DNA of 53,861 nt, the filler included, from Sluysia triapertura (Eukaryota): NCBI GenBank assembly GCA_046118255.1. It is 4 parts of 4 records of this genome, joined end to end, with 100 filler letters (N's around TTAATTAATTAA, not from the genome) between each part and the next. Parts side by side here need not be neighbours in the genome. Positions count along the whole stretch, not along the records: positions 40,836 to 53,861 come from JBJNIA010065077.1; 3 more parts are not named here. One strand, 5' to 3'. Below the pieces are notes generated by a model that saw nothing but the letters and a program-made list of their open reading frames with translations, ran no database searches and was not told the origin of the DNA. The translations under genes and the position numbers were made by a program. Position 1 is the stretch's first letter. Every line of letters starts with the position of its first letter. Below are positions 40,655-53,861 of the stretch, piece by piece.

Positions 40655-40915
40655 GTGTTACTCAATTTCAGATAGAAAAGTGAAAAAATTACAATTAATA
40701 ATTAATCAAGCAGCAAGATTAATTCTCCAAGTTGGNNNNNNNNNNNNNNNNNNNNNNNNNNNNNNNNNNNNNNNNNNNNTTAATTAATTAANNNNNNNNN
40801 NNNNNNNNNNNNNNNNNNNNNNNNNNNNNNNNNNNAACAACCTATATTTCGTACTATTTGCTTCGCATCTAGTGTCTTGCCACCTACAATTAATTTTGCT
40901 TCATTCATTTTGAAT
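40655..40915. mobile_element. Two more fragments of the same L2 family flanking the gap (+ strand before it, - strand after it)
   Basis: About 40674-40735 reads RKVKKLQLIINQAARLILQVG on +. 40836-40915 matches about 39749-39825 at the nucleotide level. Confidence 0.85.
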
Positions 40916-42539
40916 GAAGACCTTCTCGAAATATTTCATTGTTTCATCAACACTGCTAATGCAGTTCGTATAACCCAGAAGATTAGTTGGTTTTCTCATT
41001 ATATTGTTCATAGATCCATCAATTTAGAAGCACCAATCGTTTGTATTTATATTTTTGCTTTTTCTTCGTGTGTAACTTGCCTATTAGATACACATCCGTA
41101 GTTAAATGGTCAATAAAAGATTTCTCGAAATCATCATTAACGTCGACACAGAAGTTAAGGTAGAATTTTTGATAAAATAAGCAAGTTTCCTAATTAATTT
41201 CAATGTAAATCGAAATAATAACGATATTCGGCGTAACAAATTGAATTAAATTCAGAAAATTATTAATTTATTAAAGGAGTTAAAAATAAAGTTATTGTTC
41301 AACAATCAACTCGAATAGAAATTGTTTATAATTATAATTATAATTTTTTCTCTTAAATGCGATGACGATGCAAATTAGTTATTGCATAAATAATACAATT
41401 CTCATTATTCATTTAATTTTCATTTAATCCTGTTGTCGTTGAATGTTTCCAAGGTTACTAAGAATAATAGTTATTTCTAGCTATACTTAATGATGATGAC
41501 GACGTTTTTACTACTTATTAATTATAATAAATATGTAATGTTACGCATTAGACAAATTTAAAATTTTCTTTTAATGTCGATGTTATTATTACTTGCATAA
41601 TTGTTGTCCTTATGTTTCATTGAGTGTGGAATTTGTTATTGTTATTCTTTTGTGTGAATTTAATTTTAAATCGACTAAATAAAATTTTGATAAATTTGCA
41701 TCTGCTATTATTATGATGAATTACTATCTTAATATTGTGAGAGATAAGTTGACAAATTAATAAATATAAGTGATTTTAAAGTTCAATTTCAAAGTTCATG
41801 ATTTTATCAAATAAAGTTTTTTTTAATTTTCCTAAACAATCGAAAAACATTTAATAAGTTTAAATTAAAGGTTCCTGACTATAATGAAAATTATTTCTTT
41901 GTTCTTTTAAAATTGTAATTAATATACATTTTTTTCAAAAGAATATTATTTTGCATGTTAAAATTGTTTGGAATAAATTTTTATTACAATAACCCAAGTT
42001 ATTGTAAACGCTTAACTCTAAAGTTATAATAGGTAATTTTTATTCAGTCAATTAAATTAGTTTATAATTAGTTTCGGTATTATGGAAGTGCACATTTTAG
42101 TATTTAAAATAATGTCACTTCATTTCACCAAATTTTATTTAAACTTTAATTTAAGTATTGCACTTACGAAATTATTCACTTCAAGTATTAGTACTCTATT
42201 TACAATAAGTGTTAGTAACGCTTAGTGACGGATTCCAGCGAAACCTTATCTAGATAACAGATCGCGAACATTGTCTGATAATAAAATATTCTAAATGATT
42301 TTAACCATTGGAACAATTAACTTTATATACTATTTTTAGTATCCAATAATTTTTGGATTCCCATTCTACGATACATTTTCTACAGTTAAGTTCTCTCTTT
42401 ATCCAAATTATATTATTTAAAATCATAAATGATTTGTAATGGAAATTTCTTCGTATATTATAATTAATTTCCTATAATGTAATCATTTATTTATTTTTGC
42501 ATATTCATTTATTTATTAATTTGTATTTTTTTTATTAAG

Positions 42540-42851
42540 TGTGGTAGCTCTCATCCCTTGTTTTCTACATTCTATTTTTGCTTTACTTTACTTATCTTTC
42601 AAAGTAAGTGTATTTTTCGTGATATTTCTTTCTCCATTTCAGATGTTTCAAGCTACTTATTATGGTATTTTGGTTTGATTTTTTTACCTTAAAAATGTAA
42701 AAGATTTTTTTTAATTATTAAATTATATTTAATTTATTCTCGCACGAATATTAAATAACAAATTCACCCATAATTTCTAATTCATCTAGGATATTCTGAG
42801 CCCATTATTGGAGATGAGATCTCCAGCTGTTTCAACTTTGCCTTCTTTTGA
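42540..42851 (+). CDS. Candidate exons (42540-42603, 42643-42664, 42790-42851) of a small hydrophobic or membrane protein
   Basis: A consensus 39-nt intron GTAAGT...TTTCAG lies at 42604-42642. The spliced frame VVALIPCFLHSIFALLYLSFK-MFQATYY-GYSEPIIGDEISSCFNFAFF* is open. 5' exons not resolved. Confidence 0.4.
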
Positions 42852-45800
42852 TCATCTTCTCACTAACAGTTGCTGACAGAAACATGTTCTTATCAATCAT
42901 TTTCAGAAATACACGTTTTTATCTTTAATGTAAAGGAATTAATAAAATAATACAGTTTTAATCGAACGGCAGAAATAAAAATAAAATTAGGATATGCAAA
43001 GTTTAAAAATTATACTTTGAAGAGCCACAAAAGCAAAACATTTTATGAATCAAACAATCTTTAACTCTGGCCATTTTCATGCTATTAAAATATAAGTTTC
43101 ATTTAGATTTGATCTAATTTATTGTTCACACTTCCTTCAAAATTATTTAAAAAATCGATTATTGTAATAATCGATATTTTAAAATTTTTAAGTAACAAAT
43201 AATATTTCAAATATGTTCATTTAATTCCATAGTTGTCCAGGACATTGGCAAGTTACATTATTTTTATTTAAATGCGTTATCAACCTAATTAATTAACATT
43301 CTCCTTTACAAAAATTAACAAACATCACTTATTACAACAAGCAAACACAAAACAAATTCCACAAACGTTTAAACATCTAAATAGTTTAACATATAAAACT
43401 TTTAACTTATAAAACTTCTTAACTTTCTCCCATAACTTCCTTTTTTTCCTTTCAACTAAAGAATAAGGAAAAATTCAATTACAAATTTCAAAAGCAAAGC
43501 TCAAAAGAACAAGATATAACTCGATGAACTCGATGTTGAAGTACAGCAATTACAAAATAATCAGACTCATTAAAACAAAAGTAACAATATGACCAAACTG
43601 AGTCTTACAGATTTGGAAGAACTGTAATTTAAGAAATTGTGGATTTGAACGAGTACGGTTGTTGTATAGAATGTTATTTTTTGTTCTTTCTTGTGATTCA
43701 GAAAATACAATGATGGTGTTGGTTACGCGAAAAATAGGATTGGATAATACTTTTCAAATAATAAATCTATTAATAATACAGACTAATATGAAGATGTGAA
43801 ATACTTTTGCGTTTTTATAAAATTCACAATTGGAACCTTATATATTAGTTATTTTAATTCTCAACTGTGAATGAAGTTGTAATATTTTATATGAACTTTC
43901 AAATTCGTAATTAAATTAAATTAAAATTTATTATGAGATAAATGGATATTTATGCATTTGGATAGAGTGAAAGCAGAAATTAACAGAAAGAATTAATTTG
44001 CAGTTTATGCAAATTTATTTTTCGTATATAAACAATAAAAGAATAATAATAATAATGATAATAATATATTTAAATTATTAGCTAGTATGGCTTCGTCGAC
44101 AAATATCCGACATAACATCAATGGTGCACTAACAGTTACATCACTGTTAATTATTACATCATAAACTGCTAAAATCCAACTTCCATTTAAATCGAAAATG
44201 CCTGTGTACACATGCAAAGAATGATAAAGGCACGTGTGTGCACTGATGTCACTTGCCAATAGACAAATTAAAAAATCGATTGCACAATAAAAATTAGGAG
44301 AGCAAAAAAATTTTGTTTAATTATTAATTAGAAATAAAGATAATAAGTTTTGTTGGCAAAAATGGAAAATCAGTTACGGTTACAAGAAAATGACAGAACC
44401 AAGAGAAATATCAATGAAAAACTTAATTGCGACAAAAGATGTATTTGTAAATATGTGACTCATTAATTCATTAATTTATTGATTTAAATATGAACTGTTA
44501 TTTTTATGACATTGATTTAAATATGAACTTCGTATGTATATAATGATATTAGCTTTCATTGATTGATTAATTTTATTCGGAAATATTTTATTTGAACATT
44601 TATTTGGAAATTATCGGAATTAATTAACTTTATATATTGGAAATATTTAAATGTAAGAATTTTTTATTTTAATTTCTTAATTTATTTAAATTTTATTAAT
44701 TTTATGAATTTCGTTACAGAATAACGTGACTATTTTAATTTTGATTATTTTAATTTAATATTTTGTTTTAGTCTGAGCAAGGTCGGACTAAAACAAGTAT
44801 ATAAACATTAATTTTTTGCAATTATCTCACAACTTATCAATACACGATTTGCAAACTGTTTATAAAATCTTTAATATCCAAGTCCATAGTTTACAATCCT
44901 TTCAAATAAAGAATTTAAGATTTTGTTACAATAATTTTCTTTGGATCAAAGTTTTATTAGTGACGTTAGTTTGATTTTATTAAGATAGATATTTTTATCA
45001 CACGTAAAATACACGTAATATTATTGTTAACATTGGGATCAATTTTAATTATTAATAAAATAATTATTTATAAAATTTCAATTATTAATATAACTAACTG
45101 AAAAAACAGTTAGTTCATGTAAATGTATTATTATTATTAATTCCACTTTTGTATATTTTTCAAGAATAAAATTTCTCTTGTTTATAATTGTTAATTTACT
45201 AATTTACATAGCTTCAAAAACTATTAAAACCTGACACCTTGATTGTTTTCAAAAAGCTAGAAGTTAATTCTAGATACGTAAAATCTTTTTCAACGATTCC
45301 ATATAACGGAATCGATAAATAAATTCAAATTTTTCATTTAAATATTTAGCTAATCAGTTTTTTTAATTTAATTTGCCAGGAGCCTCAAATTATAAAGAAT
45401 AAAAATTACCTCCAGGTAGAATTGAATACTAAGGACTTTCTTAACATATTTTTCAAGACTTATCTTACACTAACTGGCACTAACTGATGAGTCCAGTACG
45501 TTGGTAAACTCACATATTTAACTCGTTTTATTCTATTTACTACAAACCATTTCCACGTATATTATAATGTTCCAACATAATTAAATTAATGCTCATTAAG
45601 ATACCAATTCAAGTACACTATTGAAATCGATATGTAACGCATTCTTCTGGAAAAGGAATTTAGTATGTAAATGTGTAAATAAATGATTAACCAATAAATA
45701 AAATTTGATGTGTAAGAGACATGTATTGTAATATTGTAATGTGTGTACAAAATAATATCGTTATAAATAAAATCTAGATATGTGATCTGAAAATATCGTT

Positions 45801-46517
45801 GTTAATAAAATCTGTGTTAATAAAATCTGAAAAATCTAAATTTGTAAAATTGTATTTATTGATTTGTTGATTAGTGCAATTGTTGATTATAAATTCATAT
45901 TTATTTAATTCAAAAATTTTTTAACCGGAGTAATTTGTAATTTAAATTGGAATAATTTGAAAATTTAATAATTAAAGTAAGATTTTTATTAATTTTTAAT
46001 TTTAATTTTTAAATCTAATTATAATATTGATTATAATACTAATTTTTGCATAAAAGTTTGCAAAGGAATATATTTATTTTTATAATTTTGCTTTAATAAT
46101 GACCTCAAGGTCATTTTTGTAATATATGAGAACCAAAAAAACGAACATAAAAACACAAAAAATTTTACACAAAATCTTATGCACAAAAATCTTACGAAAG
46201 GAATTCTTTTGAAAATAATTCGATCCATTTCAAGACATTTAACAATTCGTTGTCGAAGAGCTAAGCTGCCATTACAATTATCGTTAGTTTTTATTAATAA
46301 TAAGTACTTTGCAATTATTAAAATTGCCTACTTAAAATATACGAAATATTCAGTTCAGCTTTTGTTACTATTTCAAAGTAGCGTATTAAATTTCTCAATT
46401 AAAATTTTCTGATTAAAGATTATTTATTAAATAATCTTCTTAAATTATAATGATATAATGTATAAACTTTTTTCTTTTGTAATAAATTTATTATACTTTG
46501 AATTATTTATTATTAAC

Positions 46518-46710
46518 AGGTTCTAGTACGAACCTTATTAAAATCAATTATTGTGTTAAAGGTTCCATTTAGAACCTAATTAAAATCATTTTGTAATTGC
46601 GAAAGATTCATTTTAGGAACATCATTAAAATCACTACTTCAAAGGTTCAATTTAAGAACCTAATTAAAATATTAATACTCCAGGTTCGAAGTAAGAACCT
46701 TATTAAAATC
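46518..46710. repeat. Array of five palindromic units AGGTTC-N6/7-GAACCT-(T/A)ATTAAAATC with a 39-44 bp period
   Basis: Units at 46518, 46560, 46604 (degenerate), 46643 and 46682. Confidence 0.9.
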
Positions 46711-49388
46711 TAATAAATTTTCTGTATTAATAAGAAATTAAATATTAGGAGTTCTTTCTAAAAAATATTACTAGAGCCTCCATTTACTTCATAAAAAGAA
46801 TCTTTTGATAGAAAATCCAACGGCTGGCCCTAACAGGCAAGTCCAGTACATTGGTGAACTCACTTTAAGCTAGGCGTTTTATTCTATATCACTTCACTTT
46901 CCTCACAGTAATGTTCGTAATGAAAAAGAACCAATTCAACGTTTATATGTCGATATACAGTTTATGTGAAGTATTATCCATATGTTATTATATTTTCGTG
47001 AAGTTTTGGTACATAAAAATGATCAACGAGATAGAATATTTGGTTATAAAAAGTTTAACCACTCTAAATCATCTGCAGTTTCTGAAGTAACACTGAACAA
47101 TATGACAGTTATCTTTATGTTTTATAAAAGTAATGCATTGTTCTTTATTTTCATATTGTTATTTAAAGTTAAAAAAACGTCCAATGTGTTTATTTTAAAA
47201 GTTAAATTAGTTGATATTTTAATTACAAAATTGGTTAAATTAATTAAGACAGTTAAAAATGTAATTTATTATTTCAAGTTGATGTGCGATTGTTATGTTA
47301 AATTTTAAGGTAATTAAAAAATTCATTAATCACTTTTATTTCATTTTTTATGTAATTACCAAAAAAATAAATTCTAACAAATTCATAAATAAAATTTTCA
47401 TAACGCTCTTAACCCGAACACGAAAATCTTAAAATAGAAATTAAACTTACATGCCTTTCCATTCCCGGTGATCGGAACGAGTATCCGAGCTCACACTTTC
47501 ACATAAAATAAAGAATAGAAATCATTTATAAATCAAGAAAATAAAGGGTTGTTAAGACTAGATAATCATTAAGAGACTTTAAGCTATTGTCAATACATAA
47601 TAATATACAATGAAGAAATTTAAATTATTGTTAAATTATCTTTTAAGAATTAAGAAGCTGTATTGATAAATTTAAGAATTTACTAAGACATTCTATTGAG
47701 TTTACATCAAAAGTTTAATTTATCGTTAGTATAGACAAAATACGTGGTAGATATAAATTCGTTAAAACAAAGCCATTTTAAGTTTCGAAAAGAACGTATA
47801 CGAAAACCTAGCATTTTTTCTAAATTCAATAATATGTTTAATATATAATTGTCATTAATAGTACAGTTAATAAAGAATTTAATAAAGGCGTGAATGAATG
47901 AGACTTTATAATCAGTGTCTTGAAAGATGTTAAATGGATAATCGTGATAATAAGTATAGTAAGTATAGCGAAGTGTGGAGGTTTCCCAAGAAGAGTGATT
48001 AGAGTGAATATAAATCATACATTTCGTACGTGTTATGTTAAGAAAAAAATTTAAATTAACATTGGTGTTATAATATCGCTAGTTGCATAGAATATAAAAG
48101 AATTGTTGAGAAAACGTGTACATTTACTATGTAGAATTATAAATTATAAATTTGTATATTGTAAATTCGTTATATGTAAATTTATGTAAAATTTTCAATA
48201 TTAATCTATATTGTTAAAGAAAATTGTAAATTTTTGTATAAAAAATGTTCTATTATTCTATATTTAATTCTATTATTCTAATATTTAATTTAAATATTTT
48301 AGTTATTACAGAAATTTAAAAGAAAACATATATCTACGAATTTATTATTAAACAAATATATTAAATTACGAATGATTATTACATTATTATTACAGAAAAT
48401 ATTATAAATTTATTATTATTTTTATGAGTGAAAATATAAAATAGCAAAAAAATAAATAAACTCATTTAATTACCGCAAAAAGATATGAAGTATAAAAAGC
48501 AAAAAATGTTTTACAAAAACTCACACCAAAGAATCAGCAAAATAATTTTTAAAGACAAAAGCGACGTCTACAGTGACACAGTTCAAAAAAGATTGATAAG
48601 TTACAAGATATTCATACATGAAGACAAAAAGGTTCATCTAAATAATCTTACTTTCAAGAGGAATTCGTGATTACTTTTGAATACACTTCTAACAATATTT
48701 CAACATTCAGTTGGAAATTATTTTGTTCAAAAGCATTCGATTTATCTTCAATTTTTTTAGACGATTTTCTGGACTTTCCATGAATCCGTAAGTTGGTTTT
48801 GTATAAGTTTAAGCTGGAATATTTAGCTTAAAATCCACTTAAAATCATATTTTTTAACATCTAAGCATTCGCCTGGATCAATTTGAATTTAAAACTTTTA
48901 ATCTAATTTAGGAGAAATCATAAAATTTAATTTAACATATTTATATTTATATATTTATTTGAATTTATATTATTTTTGTTTTTAATTTTGACATTTGCTA
49001 ATAAATCATTAATCTTCAGTTTGTTAATTTTTGTTAAAAGTCAAGTTAAATTAATAAAAACAATTTAACGTCAGAGTAAGAATAACCGTTTACAAATAAG
49101 AATTCCTTAGACCACAAAAGATTGTTAAGAATTTATAAATATTGTAAAAAGATTTTTAGAGAAGAATAATGCCAAATAATGTGCAAGAATCTCACTTGAA
49201 TTTTTACCATTTGAACACATTATTTAAGTAGTTAAACTTCGAAAATTGATAATATTTTATAGCAAAGTTGTGAAACGTTTCATAGATAATCATCTAAGTG
49301 GCTTTAGAGACCCTCATAAATATCACTATTAAAAATTATTATTGCATAGCAGAGTGTGAGGAAACTTTTCGTAGCGATTTGACTAAAT

Positions 49389-49444
49389 CCTGTAATTGTG
49401 TCTTCCGAGATATAAATCACAAATTACAGGCTAACCCGTAAGAT
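49389..49444 (+). ncRNA. Candidate structured RNA (H-type pseudoknot), copy 1
   Basis: CCTGTAA-TTGTG pairs with CACAA-A-TTACAGG. Loop TCTTCCG pairs with downstream CGTAAGA. Covaries with copy 2. Confidence 0.5.
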
Positions 49445-50454
49445 ATTTTCATAATTGTTTATAGATAAAACACAACTATTTTCATAACTGTGTAAGCCTA
49501 CATTTTTAAAATTACACATTTAATGTAACATTTATGGAAGGCTTTACATATCTTAAAATTACTTTTATTACCGGTGAATGCTTTAAAACTTAAATATTTT
49601 CCTTTTTATTTTACTAATTTTTACTTTATTTATTAAACAAAGGCCTGTATTGAAATGTTTACGGGGGTGTATTTCCCAAAACAATAAATGAACATAAAGG
49701 CACAAAGATTTATAAGACTTAAAAACATAAGAATAAGAACTCATAATAAGAATAAAATTTTCATATAATTTATTATCATTATCATCACAATAACTCATAA
49801 TCAGAATCTCATAAAGTTGCTCCTTTATATTTTTATAAAAATATAAAAGGAAAAGAATTTAAATAATCTCGAACAGCAAAATAACACATTCGTAAAATTC
49901 AACTTGATATTTTTGGTACATTTAGATCGACCAGCTTTTTAGTAACTCAAATTAAAGAATGGCAGAAAATCAATTGAAAACATTCGATCACTGATTTGGA
50001 TTTTACAAATTTTTATCCATGAATACGTAAGATTTGTTATTTAAGGATATCCTATAATAATTTAGGATCAAACTCATACTTAAATTTTGTTAATATTCCA
50101 TAGCCAAATATTAAATCTGGCTTAATATTTTTATTTTCTAAACTTCATATTAAATGAAGTGAAATAACTTAATTTCCAATTGTTATATCTTTATTATAAA
50201 TATTACTGATAATACCATCTTGTGAATAATTTTTTTGTATTTTATTTATTTTATAGTCTTTGATAATAGAACTTAGAATTGGTACATAGAATTTATACAT
50301 AGTGTTATATATAATTTAGAATTTATATATACATACGCGTTAAATTTTTATCAAACGATTAATTTTAAAACTCTCAGTGTAGGTTGACGTTCGCAAAAAA
50401 ATTTATTTAGAATAAATAAATTCTCCCTAGGTATTCGAAATTACTAATATAAAA

Positions 50455-50513
50455 CCTGAAGCGGTGTCTTGTACGCATATAAATCAGCGACTTCAGGCGA
50501 ATCCGAATAAGAT
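50455..50513 (+). ncRNA. Candidate structured RNA (H-type pseudoknot), copy 2
   Basis: CCTGAAG-CGGTG pairs with CAGCG-A-CTTCAGG. Loop TCTTGTACG pairs with downstream CGAATAAGA. Confidence 0.5.
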
Positions 50514-51139
50514 TTTTACATATTTGCTAAGAGTTTCATAATCTCGAGTTAATAAATGTTGTGGCCAACCCAATACTGCAAGAATCACTTTTCTGAACAT
50601 TTCATAATTGTTAATACTCTCAGATATTTCAAGCATAAAATTTCACAATATCAAATTCATACTCCACATCCAAAGCCAGCAAACATATATTTTAAAATTA
50701 ATTTAAAAAAATTTCAAATTTAATGCAATATATCGCACATTATATAACATTTTACTAATTTTATCAAAACCTTTTTCATATTCTATCTCCTTCACTTCTA
50801 CTAAAACATTATTCTAATCGTCTTATAACAATCATATTTCATAACTTTATAACATCAAAATATTTAATCATGTACATTCTTTAAAACATCAAAGTAATCC
50901 TTTAAACCATTTCAGAGTCACATTTCATAAATCATTTTTAACAATTTCAATTATGTTAAGAATTAGAATAATGTAAAAAGACAGGTCATGCCTTTTAGAA
51001 AGATAAGAGATTTATGCTCTTTCCATTACAATTTATTTCATTTTTAATATGATACTGTTATTATCATTTTATTTTATGTATCATACTAATTGTAATTTAA
51101 CCATTTTATTATCAGCATTTCGTACTTTTGACAATTTAT

Positions 51140-51390
51140 ATTAACAACTGCCAGTAATTGACAGTTTTAATCTAAATAAAATAGTTTCTACCGTATTTAC
51201 TGTCAGCTGCTGACAGTTAGATTACTGAAATTTAATTATCTTTTGAAGTGCCAGCTTTGCAAGCTTGTACTGAAACGACACATTTGTTTAATATAATTTA
51301 TGGTCTGATTGGACACCAATCAAATTTATTTTAAGTTACATTTCTTGTTACTCCAATTGGACCTCCAATCAGATAACACAACTCACTGAT
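51140..51390 (+). promoter_or_regulatory. Promoter-like motif cluster upstream of the CCCH gene
   Basis: Two CTG(T/C)CA-N5-TGACAG palindromes (51148, 51200) and several CCAAT/ATTGG boxes (about 51308-51370). Confidence 0.45.
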
Positions 51391-51567
51391 ATCTCCACAT
51401 TACCCATATAATTTATTTTTTAGTACAATATTAATAGTATCGTGAATATTAATTTTAAGGTGAACTTATTGCAGGAATTAATTAAAAACGGATTTTTCAT
51501 TATAAATCATCAACATTATTATTAGTATTTGAATAAACAATCTTCGCTCCTAATATTAGTCAATAAT

Positions 51568-52591
51568 ATGTATATTAAAATTATAGTTAGCAAAGAATCT
51601 TTTGGCATACAATATTATAATGATCACCGCACTCCAATTACATATGCAAAGAGAACAATGTATATCTCATCTAAGTTTGTTTATAGAAATGTATTATTCG
51701 ACTCTCCAGAGAAGCACAAAGTAAAATTTGGTTACATAGATGATTCTATTATCAACAACCAGACTAATGAATTGAATCTTAATGATAAGTGTTTTACTGT
51801 CATATTATAAGTATCGGAACAATCATTTTAAAAAAGATTAGTTAATGAAGCACCAATTTTTGATACATATTACAGATCGTTCAACATGTTACAAAAAATT
51901 TTAATAGTTCCTAGAGAATTGTATTTTAGTCTTGAGCAACTGCATGATATCAATAGAAGTTTAACGATGCCACTTTATTCAGCTCGTTCAAAACAACTTA
52001 TTAAGATTTGTAAAAGTAATAAATTAATCATATTCGTAGATGCAAATCAATTTTCCTTTTTTATAAGTATCATGTCAAAATTTGATAAAAGGCCTTTTAG
52101 ATCACTTGAGAACAAGAATAATAAATTTTCAAAAAAAACTATACATTGATTACCCTTTCATTACAAGTAGATAAACATTATTCAAGACCTTTATGTTAAA
52201 AAATGAATCAATTCAAAATTTCTCGTGGTCTTAACAGATCTTACAATGTAAATGCTCAGATTTATGCTAGTGAAGGTAAACAATATAAAGAAGGTATTTG
52301 TTTATACATGACTACACCAAATGGCCAATGTTCCAGATTCGGTAATAAGTGTCAATATGCTCATAATATCTTAGATATCAAACGTGGTACCAGTTATTCT
52401 GCCTGTTTCAGCGAGCACAACATGCGAATCAATATTCTCCTGTCGAGTTTGGCTAAAATGCCGGTAAATTTAATAACTTTATATTACATTTTATTTTTTG
52501 ATACAAAACAATTTTATCACTTCTATTTATTTAGGTCCAAGATGAGAAACAATTCAGAACATTGAGAGAATATCCAACAAATTTAAATTAA
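51568..52591 (+). pseudogene. Disrupted CCCH zinc-finger gene, possibly ZC3H12/Regnase-like
   Basis: Track ORFs 51529 and 51886 share one frame, broken by TAA at 51808 and 51829, TGA at 52147 and TAG at 52168. A frameshift in the A-run at about 52200 leads into CLYMTTPNGQCSRFGNKCQYAH (C-x9-C-x6-C-x3-H). A 71-nt intron (52464-52534) precedes the terminal exon VQDEKQFRTLREYPTNLN*. Confidence 0.6.
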
Positions 52592-53861
52592 ATTTTAAAC
52601 TACACTTATTTTTAGTAAAAATAAATCTGTCTAATGTTTACCTTTGCTTGTTCTTAATGTTTAAAGAAGCAAATCTAATGTATTTAACTAAATTTTGTAT
52701 AACAATAGATCATATTCTTCTACTATAATTATTTTTAAAGAGATGAGTTTAAATTATTTAATAACGAGTACAATCATACTACACTTATTAAAATTTAAGA
52801 AATTAAACGTATACCACCACAATAAAAATCATTTCTATGATTACATTTTATGATTTTATATTGTTAAAATTTTATGTGAGAAAATTATATTATTATTATT
52901 ATTATTATTAAAGTACACAAAAAGTATTAAATATTAAAAAATAAAAATATAAAAAAGATAATTAAGAAAAATAATTTTGTTTAAAAAATTAAATGTTTAT
53001 TTTGTTTACAATTATTAATTTAGTTTTAGAAAAATTTTGAATATTTTAGGAACAAAGAATAATTATTTAATTTTAGGAATAAAGAAAAAATATTAAAAAT
53101 AATATTTTAGAATTAAAGAAGACAAAGGAAATAATTGTTGAAGAAAACAAAGAAAATAATTAAATATTTAGGTAAGCGAATAACATTTAGTATAAATAGA
53201 TTAGGAGTTAGTGAACAATACACACAAATAACAATTGCAACAACAGTTTTAGATTAATCCAGATTCCTGAGCTTCATGATGAACAAAAATTCTTCTTTGA
53301 TTTTAAAGTAAATTTTTATTTGTAAGTTTTGTATTCAGCCTAAGCGGGAATACCAAAATCTAACTTAAAATCTTTGTTTATTTTCGTACCAACACCTTAA
53401 ATGGGTAATTTGAAACTAAATTTCTAATGATCAATCATGAATTGAATTATATCTAATGTTACTATTGCTGCTATACTTGTCTACGAATTGTACCAAAGTT
53501 TTAACGTTTTATAATAGTTTTTAGTTTGAAAAGTTAATATAAAGCATTTCGATTTCGTTACTTTGAATCTAAAATACTAGTTTGTGCAACTTACTAAGTT
53601 ATTAATTAAAATCCCTATTTTATGACAACACCTTAATAAAAGGGTTGTGTAATTTAGTAAAATCTTAAACCTAAAAAGATTGATTCTAGCTTATTAAGTT
53701 GCATTTGCCTGCGATTTAAGTTAATATAAATTTTAATTGTAAAATTCTAATAATACGTCTCCAATAGTGGTATAAAGCGTACATATTAGGTGGACCGATC
53801 CCTCAGGTAATTTGCTATTAGGTGTAACATATTAAAAACACTAGAAATATATATATATATA

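What the first reader, a model, noticed from the sequence alone, without database searches (positions are those of the whole stretch)
49389..50513. Two diverged copies of a covarying pseudoknot: candidate new structured RNA or ribozyme
Seen: two ~55-60-nt elements 1066 bp apart, about two-thirds identical by eye, whose differences are concentrated in paired positions. Helix 1 is CCTGTAA.TTGTG/CACAA.A.TTACAGG in copy 1 and CCTGAAG.CGGTG/CAGCG.A.CTTCAGG in copy 2. That gives four compensatory double changes (T-A>A-T, A-T>G-C, T-A>C-G, T-A>G-C), the same bulged A, and one G.G mismatch in copy 2. The loop pairs with sequence 3' of the hairpin (TCTTCCG/CGTAAGA versus TCTTGTACG/CGAATAAGA), and copy 2 gains 2 nt on both strands of this second helix. 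The unpaired ATATAAAT and C(T/G)AA(C/T)C linkers are conserved. G-U pairs favour the + strand. Known: CUAA and CGAA before the last helix are the J4/2 words of antigenomic and genomic HDV ribozymes, but the HDV P3/L3, P1.1 and P4 elements are not present, so this is not a canonical HDV fold. Inference: a selected RNA or ssDNA structure that I cannot assign to a known family. Alternative: duplicated coding exons (INHKLQANP and INQRLQANP; copy 1 sits between AG 49349 and GTAAGA 49438).
Basis: partly seen in the sequence, partly recalled or inferred. Interest (0 to 1): 0.8.

Follow-up and report, generated by a model that had tools for sequence, protein, structure and literature searches.

The report
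Covarying hairpin around a UAUAAA word
Two real, diverged copies (probably four) of an 80-base non-coding module keep a 12-base-pair hairpin through compensatory changes, which suggests a small unassigned structured element, but there is no support for the proposed pseudoknot or ribozyme.

Summary
The two copies (B1 49384-49464, B2 50450-50533, + strand) are real paralogues and give the best composition-weighted local match in the 13-kb piece. Helix 1 is as described: 12 bp, one bulged A, four double compensatory changes and one G.G mismatch. Random placement of the 22 differences gives four or more compensated pairs in about 3 of 10,000 trials. The second (pseudoknot) helix is weak at -4.1 and -5.7 kcal/mol, no better than shuffled flanks, and has no base-pair covariation. 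No Rfam family matches, including HDV-like and other ribozymes. Coding cannot explain both copies. B2 lacks the GT donor, has a 1-nt indel and carries stops in the B1 frame. The B1 ORF has no relatives.

Two more diverged modules on the same strand have the same build, a stem closing a loop that ends in UAUAAA: B0 (47968-48043) and B3 (53746-53821). B0, B1 and B2 also share TATAAATCA followed 19-21 nt later by TAAGA.

My best reading is a local family of cis-acting RNA stem-loops in a non-coding stretch of a + strand transcript, holding a UAUAAA hexamer. The function is inferred only. The main rival is tandem TATA/initiator promoter modules. No homologues could be fetched, so the taxon and transcript are unknown.

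The parts
49389..49430 (+). B1 hairpin: 5' arm 49389-49400, 17-nt loop 49401-49417 (UCUUCC...AUAUAAAU; TATAAA at 49411-49416), 3' arm 49418-49430 with bulged A 49423
49431..49464 (+). B1 conserved tail: CTAACCCG, TAAGA 49439-49443 (GT of a possible donor at 49438-49439), then a U-rich run with TTTCATAATTGT, ending in AG 49463-49464
50455..50497 (+). B2 hairpin: 5' arm 50455-50466, 18-nt loop 50467-50484 (TATAAA at 50478-50483), 3' arm 50485-50497 with bulged A 50490; G.G mismatch 50464/50487
50498..50533 (+). B2 conserved tail: CGAATCCGAA, TAAGA 50508-50512 (no GT here), then a U-rich run ending in AG 50532-50533
47968..48043 (+). B0, a probable diverged member: 5' arm 47968-47979, 35-nt loop with TTTCCCAAG, a small AGAGTGA duplication and ATATAAATCA 48008-48017; 3' arm 48015-48027 (bulged A 48017, three G.U pairs); TAAGA 48039-48043
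   Evidence: the arms are not alignable column by column with B1/B2
53746..53821 (+). B3, a possible diverged member: 5' arm 53746-53758, 18-nt loop (CTCCAATAG..GTATAAA, TATAAA 53771-53776), 3' arm 53777-53790, then CAG|GTAATT (GT at 53807-53808) and TTTGCTATTAG
   Evidence: E 0.22; p 0.06
49350..49437 (+). Possible 88-nt exon containing B1 (AG 49348-49349 to GT 49438-49439; open frame ...AECEETFRSDLTKSCNCVFRDINHKLQANP). It is optional and not shared by B2, B0 or B3

Best explanation
B1 and B2 are paralogous copies of an ~80-nt non-coding module. B0 (1.4 kb upstream) and B3 (3.3 kb downstream) are more diverged relatives on the same strand. The core is a 12-bp stem with one bulged base. It closes a loop that starts with a short pyrimidine run and ends in the invariant word (A)UAUAAA(UCA). 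In B0, B1 and B2 the 3' arm starts within the last bases of AUAUAAAUCA. It is followed by about 10 unpaired bases, UAAGA at a fixed distance, and an A/U-rich stretch. The stem sequence drifts while pairing is kept, so the fold itself is under selection. That points to single-stranded nucleic acid, most simply RNA made from the + strand. That strand also carries the only Pfam-supported exon of the piece, an Unkempt-like CCCH finger at about 52238-52463. I read the modules as cis-acting stem-loops in a long AT-rich non-coding stretch (intron or UTR). They would hold a UAUAAA hexamer and the 25-30 nt after it in a fixed fold. This would control how the RNA-processing machinery (cleavage/polyadenylation or splicing factors) sees that site, as the HIV-1 polyA hairpin does for its AAUAAA. 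Shown here: homology, the stem, the compensation, recurrence of the build, and the absence of known families. Inferred only: transcription, the strand, and the processing role.
For: The homology is beyond chance. There are four double compensatory changes in 12 pairs with 11/12 kept, at P about 1e-4. The invariant blocks GTGTCTT, ATATAAATCA, CAGGC and TAAGAT sit beside stem centres that changed at 9 of 10 positions, while the flanks are unalignable. That pattern means an old duplication with both copies under constraint. B2 became more G+C-rich in a 24% G+C background, which is not neutral decay. Among 37 + strand and 35 - strand TATAAA sites, pairing between the upstream 47 nt and the 18 nt just after the hexamer ranks B2, B1, B0 and B3 as the four best on the + strand (-16.1, -13.6, -12.9, -9.1 kcal/mol). 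All other + sites are >= -7.9. Local shuffles give p 0.004, 0.006, 0.03 and 0.06. B0 was found from its exact ATATAAATCA word, not from its fold. It also has TAAGA at the family's spacing (5 matches against 1.18 expected, 0 of 100 shuffles reach 5). The B0 stem needs three G.U pairs and folds at -13.8 on + against -6.2 on -. TTTCATAA occurs 7 times on + and 0 times on -, around the modules. A hairpin enclosing a poly(A) hexamer that tunes polyadenylation has precedent (PMC2645353).
Against: There are only two alignable sequences. B0 and B3 support a stem around UAUAAA by energy rank only, not by column-wise covariation, and B3 is marginal (E 0.22, p 0.06; its - strand folds at least as well). 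Helix 1 of B1 and B2 has no G.U pair, so their strand is undetermined. There are no expression data and no homologues outside the piece. The two invariant words at 29-31 nt spacing fit a DNA-level TATA box plus initiator equally well. B0 has no clear U-rich downstream element. Other hairpins of similar strength occur next to ATAAA words elsewhere in the piece.
Confidence: 0.4

Rival explanations
1. Tandem core-promoter modules. TATAAA is a TATA box and the TA of TAAGA is the start site 29-31 nt downstream. The modules would be duplicated alternative promoters or leader exons feeding downstream + strand exons, and the inverted repeat flanking the TATA box would be a DNA-level feature or incidental.
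For: TATAAATCA is invariant, and the distance from the first T to the first A of TAAGA is fixed at 29, 31 and 31 nt in B1, B0 and B2. That is the canonical TATA-to-initiator spacing (textbook knowledge). All modules point towards the CCCH exon. Conservation limited to about -55 to +25 suits a promoter. B1 has a good donor (GTAAGC, 49492) 52 nt after the putative start.
Against: A double-stranded promoter gives no reason for four compensatory changes or for the G.U-dependent stem in B0. TAAGA is a poor match to the arthropod initiator word TCAGT. No conserved donor follows B2 or B0, and B3 lacks TAAGA. No conserved downstream ORF or RNA was found.
Confidence: 0.2
2. Duplicated coding exons, either mutually exclusive or tandem. 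The similarity would reflect codon-level constraint and the hairpin would be a by-product.
For: B1 lies in an open frame between AG 49349 and GT 49438 at exon-like G+C. In the last nine codons (INHKLQANP against INQRLQANP), 4 of 7 substitutions are synonymous and the two replacements are conservative (read). By eye, the phases would let A2, B1 and the CCCH exon join in frame. The joined model was not built or searched.
Against: B2 has GA where B1 has GT, a 1-nt indel at column 27, and TAA and TGA in the B1 frame. In its own frame the identical words CCTG and GTGTCTT are read in a different phase. In the B1 frame B3 has a stop, and B0 carries a 17-nt insertion. No Pfam family matches, no Atlas look-alike was found, and no protein shares words with the ORF. 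The lysozyme C hits are weak (E 0.12) and unsupported by any other lysozyme motif in the piece. A 47-codon ORF is not unusual here (40 ORFs of >=35 aa).
Confidence: 0.12
3. Neutral or repeat-derived inverted repeats. These would be remnants of a small repeated element with a terminal hairpin, or hairpins made and re-perfected by replication template switching, with no function in this genome.
For: Template switching can create reverse-complement copies and mimic compensatory change in one event (PMC8794818). The changed stem positions are clustered (columns 10-14 and 38-44). The piece is rich in inverted repeats (134 pairs). The copies are local and co-oriented.
Against: 28 invariant bases sit beside fully diverged stem centres and unalignable flanks. 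This argues for long constraint on both copies. A template switch would give perfect Watson-Crick arms, but B2 has G.G and B0 has three G.U pairs. No target-site duplications, terminal repeats or transposon proteins were seen.
Confidence: 0.15
4. Stand-alone small RNA genes, or a self-cleaving ribozyme with an HDV-like nested pseudoknot.
For: Each copy is a compact conserved module with a stem, conserved loops and a T-run (TTTT, TTTTT) about 15 nt after the stem. The words CUAA and CGAA follow the stem.
Against: No Rfam family matches at E<=10, even on 171-221-nt stretches. Helix 2 is no better than chance. There is no P3/L3, P1.1 or P4, no C/D or H/ACA boxes, and the stem is too short for a pre-miRNA. 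The T-run is not kept in B0 or B3.
Confidence: 0.08

Closest known systems
HIV-1 polyA hairpin (a stem-loop enclosing the AAUAAA signal, PMC2645353)
   Same: A poly(A)-type hexamer is presented in a stem-loop whose stability matters, followed by a U-rich region. The stem is kept by pairing rather than by sequence.
   Different: This is cellular, AT-rich, non-viral DNA. The hexamer is UAUAAA and sits in the loop next to the 3' arm. There is no evidence that cleavage or polyadenylation happens here. Several co-oriented copies lie 1-3 kb apart.
HDV-like self-cleaving ribozymes
   Same: A stem whose loop could pair with sequence 3' of it, and CUAA/CGAA words before that 3' segment.
   Different: P3/L3, P1.1 and P4 are absent. 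The first stem is 12 bp rather than 7. The second helix is not supported. No covariance-model hit was found.
TATA box plus initiator core promoters in tandem alternative-promoter arrays
   Same: An invariant TATAAA, a pyrimidine-A step 29-31 nt downstream, co-orientation, and conservation confined to about 80 nt.
   Different: Promoters do not need complementary arms that covary. The initiator word is atypical. No conserved leader or donor follows.
Tandemly duplicated (mutually exclusive) exon clusters of arthropod genes
   Same: Local tandem duplicates of an exon-sized block with a donor-like site, plus a second such pair (A1/A2) upstream.
   Different: Only B1 has both splice sites and an intact frame. 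Conservation does not follow codon phase in the 5' half.
Hairpins created or maintained by replication template switching (PMC8794818)
   Same: Clustered reciprocal changes in the two arms of a short inverted repeat.
   Different: There are imperfect arms (G.G, G.U) and strongly conserved unpaired blocks next to them.

Membership tests
HDV-like ribozyme | Match to the Rfam covariance models of the HDV ribozyme clan | tested here: not met
   cmscan at E<=10 on the whole piece and on 171- and 221-nt stretches gives no ribozyme hit at B1 or B2.
HDV-like ribozyme | Nested double pseudoknot with P1 (7 bp), P1.1, P2, a G+C-rich P3 with L3, and P4 | tested here: not met
   The loop rest (AGAUAUAAAU or CAUAUAAAU) cannot form P3/L3. 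There is no hairpin between the 3' arm and the CUAA/CGAA word. The stem is 12 bp.
HDV-like ribozyme | Self-cleavage 5' of P1 | not testable with these tools
   Needs an in-vitro cleavage assay.
H-type pseudoknot | A second helix between the loop and the 3' flank, supported by energy or covariation | tested here: not met
   Energies are -4.1 and -5.7 kcal/mol, and 32% and 16% of shuffled flanks are as good. No pair covaries. In B0 the UCUU word lies outside the hairpin.
Conserved cis-acting RNA stem-loop | Stem kept by compensatory substitutions between homologues | tested here: met
   4 of 12 pairs changed on both sides and 11/12 are kept. P is about 3e-4 to 8e-5. Only two sequences are alignable.
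Conserved cis-acting RNA stem-loop | Transcribed, and folded in vivo, on the stated strand | not testable with these tools
   No expression or probing data. The B0 G.U pairs and the TTTCATAA strand bias hint at the + strand.
Canonical poly(A) site | Hexamer, cleavage site 10-30 nt downstream, and a U/GU-rich downstream element | tested here: inconclusive
   UAUAAA is present in 4 of 4 modules. A UA step lies 24-26 nt after it in B0-B2. A U-rich run follows in B1 and B2, is weak in B0, and B3 differs. Actual 3' ends are unknown.
TATA/initiator core promoter | TATA box about 30 nt upstream of a pyrimidine-A start | tested here: met
   The spacing is 29-31 nt from the first T of TATAAA to the first A of TAAGA in B1, B0 and B2. 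This is only the sequence criterion.
TATA/initiator core promoter | Transcripts start there | not testable with these tools
   Needs CAGE or 5' RACE.
Duplicated coding exons | Both copies have acceptor, open frame and donor in the same phase | tested here: not met
   B1 meets it. B2 has no GT, a 1-nt indel, and stops in the B1 frame.
Duplicated coding exons | The encoded peptide has relatives or a known domain | tested here: not met
   Pfam gave nothing, the Atlas nothing, and the word search nothing. In PDB there was only lysozyme C at E 0.12, with two mutually exclusive alignments and no other lysozyme motif nearby.
pre-miRNA / snoRNA | A stem of about 22 bp or more, or C/D or H/ACA boxes | tested here: not met
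   The stem is 12 bp. No RUGAUGA/CUGA pair or ACA box is conserved in B1 and B2. Rfam found nothing.

The most novel reading that the evidence does not exclude
The modules are dual-use sites: tandem alternative TATA promoters at the DNA level. In read-through RNA from upstream starts, the same TATAAA word would act as a poly(A) hexamer, and the covarying stem masks it. This would be a cellular counterpart of the promoter-proximal poly(A) occlusion known from retroviral LTRs. More broadly, the case is a lineage-specific structured RNA family absent from Rfam.
Probability: 0.1. Interest if true: 0.7.

Novelty: new member of a known kind. Interest (0 to 1): 0.42.

Why it matters
If the stem is truly selected, this is a compact and easily testable case of an RNA fold built around a poly(A)/TATA-type hexamer in a cellular, very AT-rich genome. 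In such a genome these hexamers are everywhere and must be told apart or silenced. It would also add a structured element that no RNA family library holds. As things stand, it is a well-supported hairpin with an unknown job, in an organism that could not be identified. The more exciting claims (pseudoknot, ribozyme) do not hold.

Tried and rejected
1. Rfam, on the whole piece at E<=10 and on two short stretches, gave only chance-level and mutually inconsistent hits.

2. I searched for homologous DNA with exact degenerate patterns of the B core and of the A pair. Metagenome contigs gave 0 hits, then 4 bacterial chance hits without the hairpin. Genome contigs gave 0 and 0. Viral contigs gave 0. 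No comparative test was therefore possible.

3. The taxon and gene could not be identified.

4. I tested a ciliate or other genetic code. ORF lengths under tables 6, 10 and 4 look like chance.

5. The lysozyme C lead for the B1 ORF came from PDB hits at E 0.12-0.9, with two incompatible alignments. Pfam was silent, the Atlas was silent, and no other lysozyme motif occurs in the piece. I treat it as chance.

6. A docking-site idea failed. The reverse complement of the loop word occurs nowhere else beyond chance.

7. The A1 word CUGAUGAG (hammerhead core) is not kept in A2 and has no Rfam hit.

8. The A pair shows no covarying stem.

9. Column-wise alignment of the four hairpins failed, because MAFFT does not put the pairing arms of B0 in register with B1 and B2. 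B0 and B3 count only through the energy-rank test.

10. I read the phases of a three-exon joined model (A2-B1-CCCH exon) by eye.

The contig does not look human.

Full report
**Setting**

The piece 40836-53861 is 16-28% G+C per 500 nt and has no CpG depletion (observed/expected 1.06). It has no tRNA. Its longest ORF is 123 codons, and alternative genetic codes do not improve on chance. It therefore reads as intron- or spacer-rich DNA of an AT-rich eukaryote. I could not name the organism.

The one stretch with family support is a + strand ORF. Its part from about 52238 or 52260 to 52463 encodes an Unkempt-like CCCH zinc finger. Pfam PF25427 matches at E 3.3e-8, above its cut-off. The best solved relative is Unkempt 5elh. 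Nothing closer than 45% identity exists among 1.8 billion representative proteins. The contig does not look human.

**The observation**

The two elements exist as described. I call them B1 (49384-49464) and B2 (50450-50533).
- With scoring that weights G and C matches by their rarity, the pair scores 43 bits. This is the best of 182 block-by-block comparisons of the piece in both orientations (median 18, 95th percentile 23.6).
- With flat scoring the pair is only modestly above shuffles, because AT-rich DNA aligns with itself easily.
- Helix 1 has 12 pairs and one bulged A. Seven pairs are invariant, four changed on both sides and stayed paired, and one became G.G in B2.
- I placed the 22 observed differences at random over the 81 aligned columns. 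Four or more compensated pairs arose in about 3 of 10,000 trials. Together with 11 of 12 pairs kept, the rate was about 8 in 100,000.
- Both copies fold better than their dinucleotide shuffles on the + strand (z -2.5 and -3.1).

**What does not hold**

The second helix can be written down but is weak. Its energies are -4.1 and -5.7 kcal/mol, and 32% and 16% of shuffled 3' flanks pair with the loop at least as well. It has no covarying pair. It rests on invariant UCUU/AAGA and CG/CG and an indel. In the diverged relative B0, the GTGTCTT word lies about 50 nt upstream of the hairpin rather than in its loop.

Helix 1 of B1 and B2 contains no G.U pair, so these two copies do not choose a strand.

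Rfam gives nothing at either copy, even at E<=10 with the lax filters used for short stretches. I put the ribozyme reading at a few per cent.

**Coding or not**

B1 lies in a 47-codon open frame with AG at 49348-49349 and GTAAGA at 49438, at exon-like G+C. In the last nine codons, four of seven substitutions between the copies are synonymous.

Coding nevertheless fails as an explanation of the pair:
- B2 has GA where B1 has its GT donor.
- B2 differs by a 1-nt indel in the loop.
- In the B1 frame B2 carries TAA and TGA.
- In B2's own open frame (50431-50538), the identical words CCTG and GTGTCTT are read in another phase than in B1. Their conservation is therefore at the nucleotide level.
- B2 also gained G+C in a 24% G+C background, the opposite of a decaying pseudo-exon.

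The B1 peptide has no Pfam family, no Atlas look-alike, and no protein sharing words with it within the length range that search can see. Its only hits among solved structures are lysozyme C at E 0.12-0.9, through two mutually exclusive alignments. The piece holds no other lysozyme motif, so I treat that as chance.

B1 may still be an exon. By eye, the phases of A2, B1 and the CCCH exon would be compatible.

**More members**

The exact loop word ATATAAATCA occurs a third time on the + strand at 48008. Around it, 47968-47979 pairs with 48015-48027: 12 pairs, one bulged A and three G.U. This stretch folds at -13.8 kcal/mol on the + strand against -6.2 on the - strand. I call this element B0. Its loop starts with TTTCCCAAG (compare TCTTCCGAG in B1). 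It is lengthened by a small AGAGTGA duplication.

TAAGA follows the hexamer at the same distance as in B1 and B2. The pattern TATAAA-N20-27-TAAGA has 5 matches against 1.18 expected, and none of 100 shuffles reaches 5. Three of the five matches are B0, B1 and B2.

The covariance model built from B1 and B2 gives one weak further hit, B3 at 53741-53821 (E 0.22). B3 has a 12-pair stem, an 18-nt loop (CTCCAATAG..GTATAAA) and a following CAG|GTAATT.

As an independent test I took every TATAAA in the piece. For each I computed the best duplex between the 47 nt upstream and the 18 nt starting at the last base of the hexamer.
- On the + strand the four best of 37 sites are B2, B1, B0 and B3 (-16.1, -13.6, -12.9, -9.1 kcal/mol). 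All others are -7.9 or weaker.
- The 35 - strand sites give one at -10.5 and the rest at -7.7 or weaker.
- Shuffling each upstream segment gives p 0.004, 0.006, 0.03 and 0.06.

MAFFT does not put the pairing arms of B0 in register with those of B1 and B2. B0 and B3 therefore support the statement that a stem is kept around the UAUAAA word. They do not add column-wise covariation. Hairpins of similar strength do occur next to looser ATAAA words elsewhere (44204-44243, 51277-51405, 53591-53660), so B3 in particular stays provisional.

**What it most likely is**

The pattern has three parts: fully conserved unpaired blocks, stem centres that changed at 9 of 10 positions yet still pair, and flanks that no longer align. 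This fits an old local duplication in which both copies stayed under selection for a fold and for the words it displays. It is the signature of a structured single-stranded element.

RNA from the + strand is the simplest carrier. The B0 stem needs G.U pairs. The CCCH exon is on that strand. TTTCATAA occurs seven times on + and never on - around the modules, and the exact 12-mer TTTCATAAYTGT occurs three times against about 0.03 expected.

The only features shared by all members are the stem, a pyrimidine run at the 5' end of the loop, and UAUAAA at its 3' end, abutting or overlapping the start of the 3' arm. B0-B2 add UAAGA 19-21 nt after ATATAAATCA and an A/U-rich tail. I therefore favour a cis-acting stem-loop that presents or masks a UAUAAA hexamer and the 25-30 nt after it to RNA-processing factors. 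The HIV-1 polyA hairpin is the known analogue (PMC2645353). That functional step is inference only. My confidence in the whole statement is about 0.4. For the narrower claim that the stem is selected, it is higher, about 0.65.

**Rivals**

1. TATA/initiator promoter modules. The first T of TATAAA lies 29-31 nt upstream of the first A of TAAGA in B1, B0 and B2, which is the textbook spacing. Conservation confined to about -55 to +25 would suit duplicated alternative promoters. A promoter does not explain compensatory arms, however, and no conserved leader or donor follows. Confidence 0.2. A combined reading is the most novel case I cannot exclude: a promoter at the DNA level whose TATA word is masked as a poly(A) signal in read-through RNA. 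Probability about 0.1.
2. Coding exons. Confidence 0.12, for the reasons given above.
3. Neutral or repeat-derived inverted repeats. Replication template switching can create and re-perfect hairpins in one step (PMC8794818). The clustering of the changed positions fits this. The G.G and G.U pairs, and the invariant blocks beside unalignable flanks, do not. Confidence 0.15.
4. A small RNA gene or ribozyme. Confidence 0.08.

**Limits**

No homologous DNA could be fetched from the metagenome, prokaryote-genome or viral collections. Everything therefore rests on four local copies. Only two of them align, and there are no transcript data.

**Verdict**

The hairpin is real, statistically sound and probably selected. 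It sits in a small local family, is unassigned to any known RNA family, and has unknown function. The pseudoknot and ribozyme claims are not supported. Interest is moderate.

Noticed in passing
45474-45545 and 46824-46896 (+): A second pair of tandem duplicates (A1 and A2, 1350 nt apart, about 40 bits by composition-weighted score). They share CTGGC.CTAAC...AGTCCAGTAC.TTG|GT(A/G)AACTCAC and a downstream CGTTTTATTCTAT. They are donor-like and show no covarying stem. A2 could be a 42-nt exon, while A1 has in-frame stops.
   Followed up: partly
about 52238/52260-52463 (+): Exon-like ORF encoding an Unkempt-type CCCH zinc finger with C-x9-C-x6-C-x3-H spacing (Pfam PF25427, E 3e-8). It ends at a GTAAAT donor. 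Nothing closer than 45% identity exists among 1.8 billion representative proteins.
   Followed up: partly
47396-50923 (+): TTTCATAA occurs 7 times on the + strand and never on the - strand. The exact 12-mer TTTCATAAYTGT occurs at 49447, 49480 and 50600, just after B1 (twice) and 85 nt after B2. It may be a strand-specific RNA or regulatory motif.
   Followed up: partly
46518-46714 (+): A short array of 3-4 units at 42-123-nt spacing. Each holds a small palindrome, AGGTTC..GAACCT, followed by TTATTAAAATC.
   Followed up: no
51277-51405: A long imperfect inverted repeat (TCTGATTGGA...TCCAATCAGA) that gives equal chance-level MIR1520 hits on both strands. It looks like a foldback or MITE-like element.
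   Followed up: no
53591-53660 (+): A strong extended hairpin (-16.7 kcal/mol, z -3.4, 0 of 200 shuffles as good). Its apical loop holds AAUAA within AAUAAAA. It lies about 135 nt upstream of B3.
   Followed up: no
44204-44243 (+): A hairpin with an 11-bp stem and an 18-nt loop ending in GAUAAAGG, the same proportions as the B stems. It is not better than shuffles of its G+C-rich surroundings (z -0.55).
   Followed up: no
47456-47502 (-): An exon-like block on the opposite strand: a T-rich tract plus AG acceptor, an open frame (CELGYSFRSPGMERH) and a GTAAGT donor. This hints at a - strand transcript overlapping the region.
   Followed up: no
47527-47557 (+): A further TATAAATCA followed 17 nt later by TTAAGA, with no flanking stem. 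It could be chance or a decayed module.
   Followed up: no
45491-45498 (+): A1 contains the hammerhead core word CUGAUGAG. A2 does not keep it, and no hammerhead model matches.
   Followed up: yes
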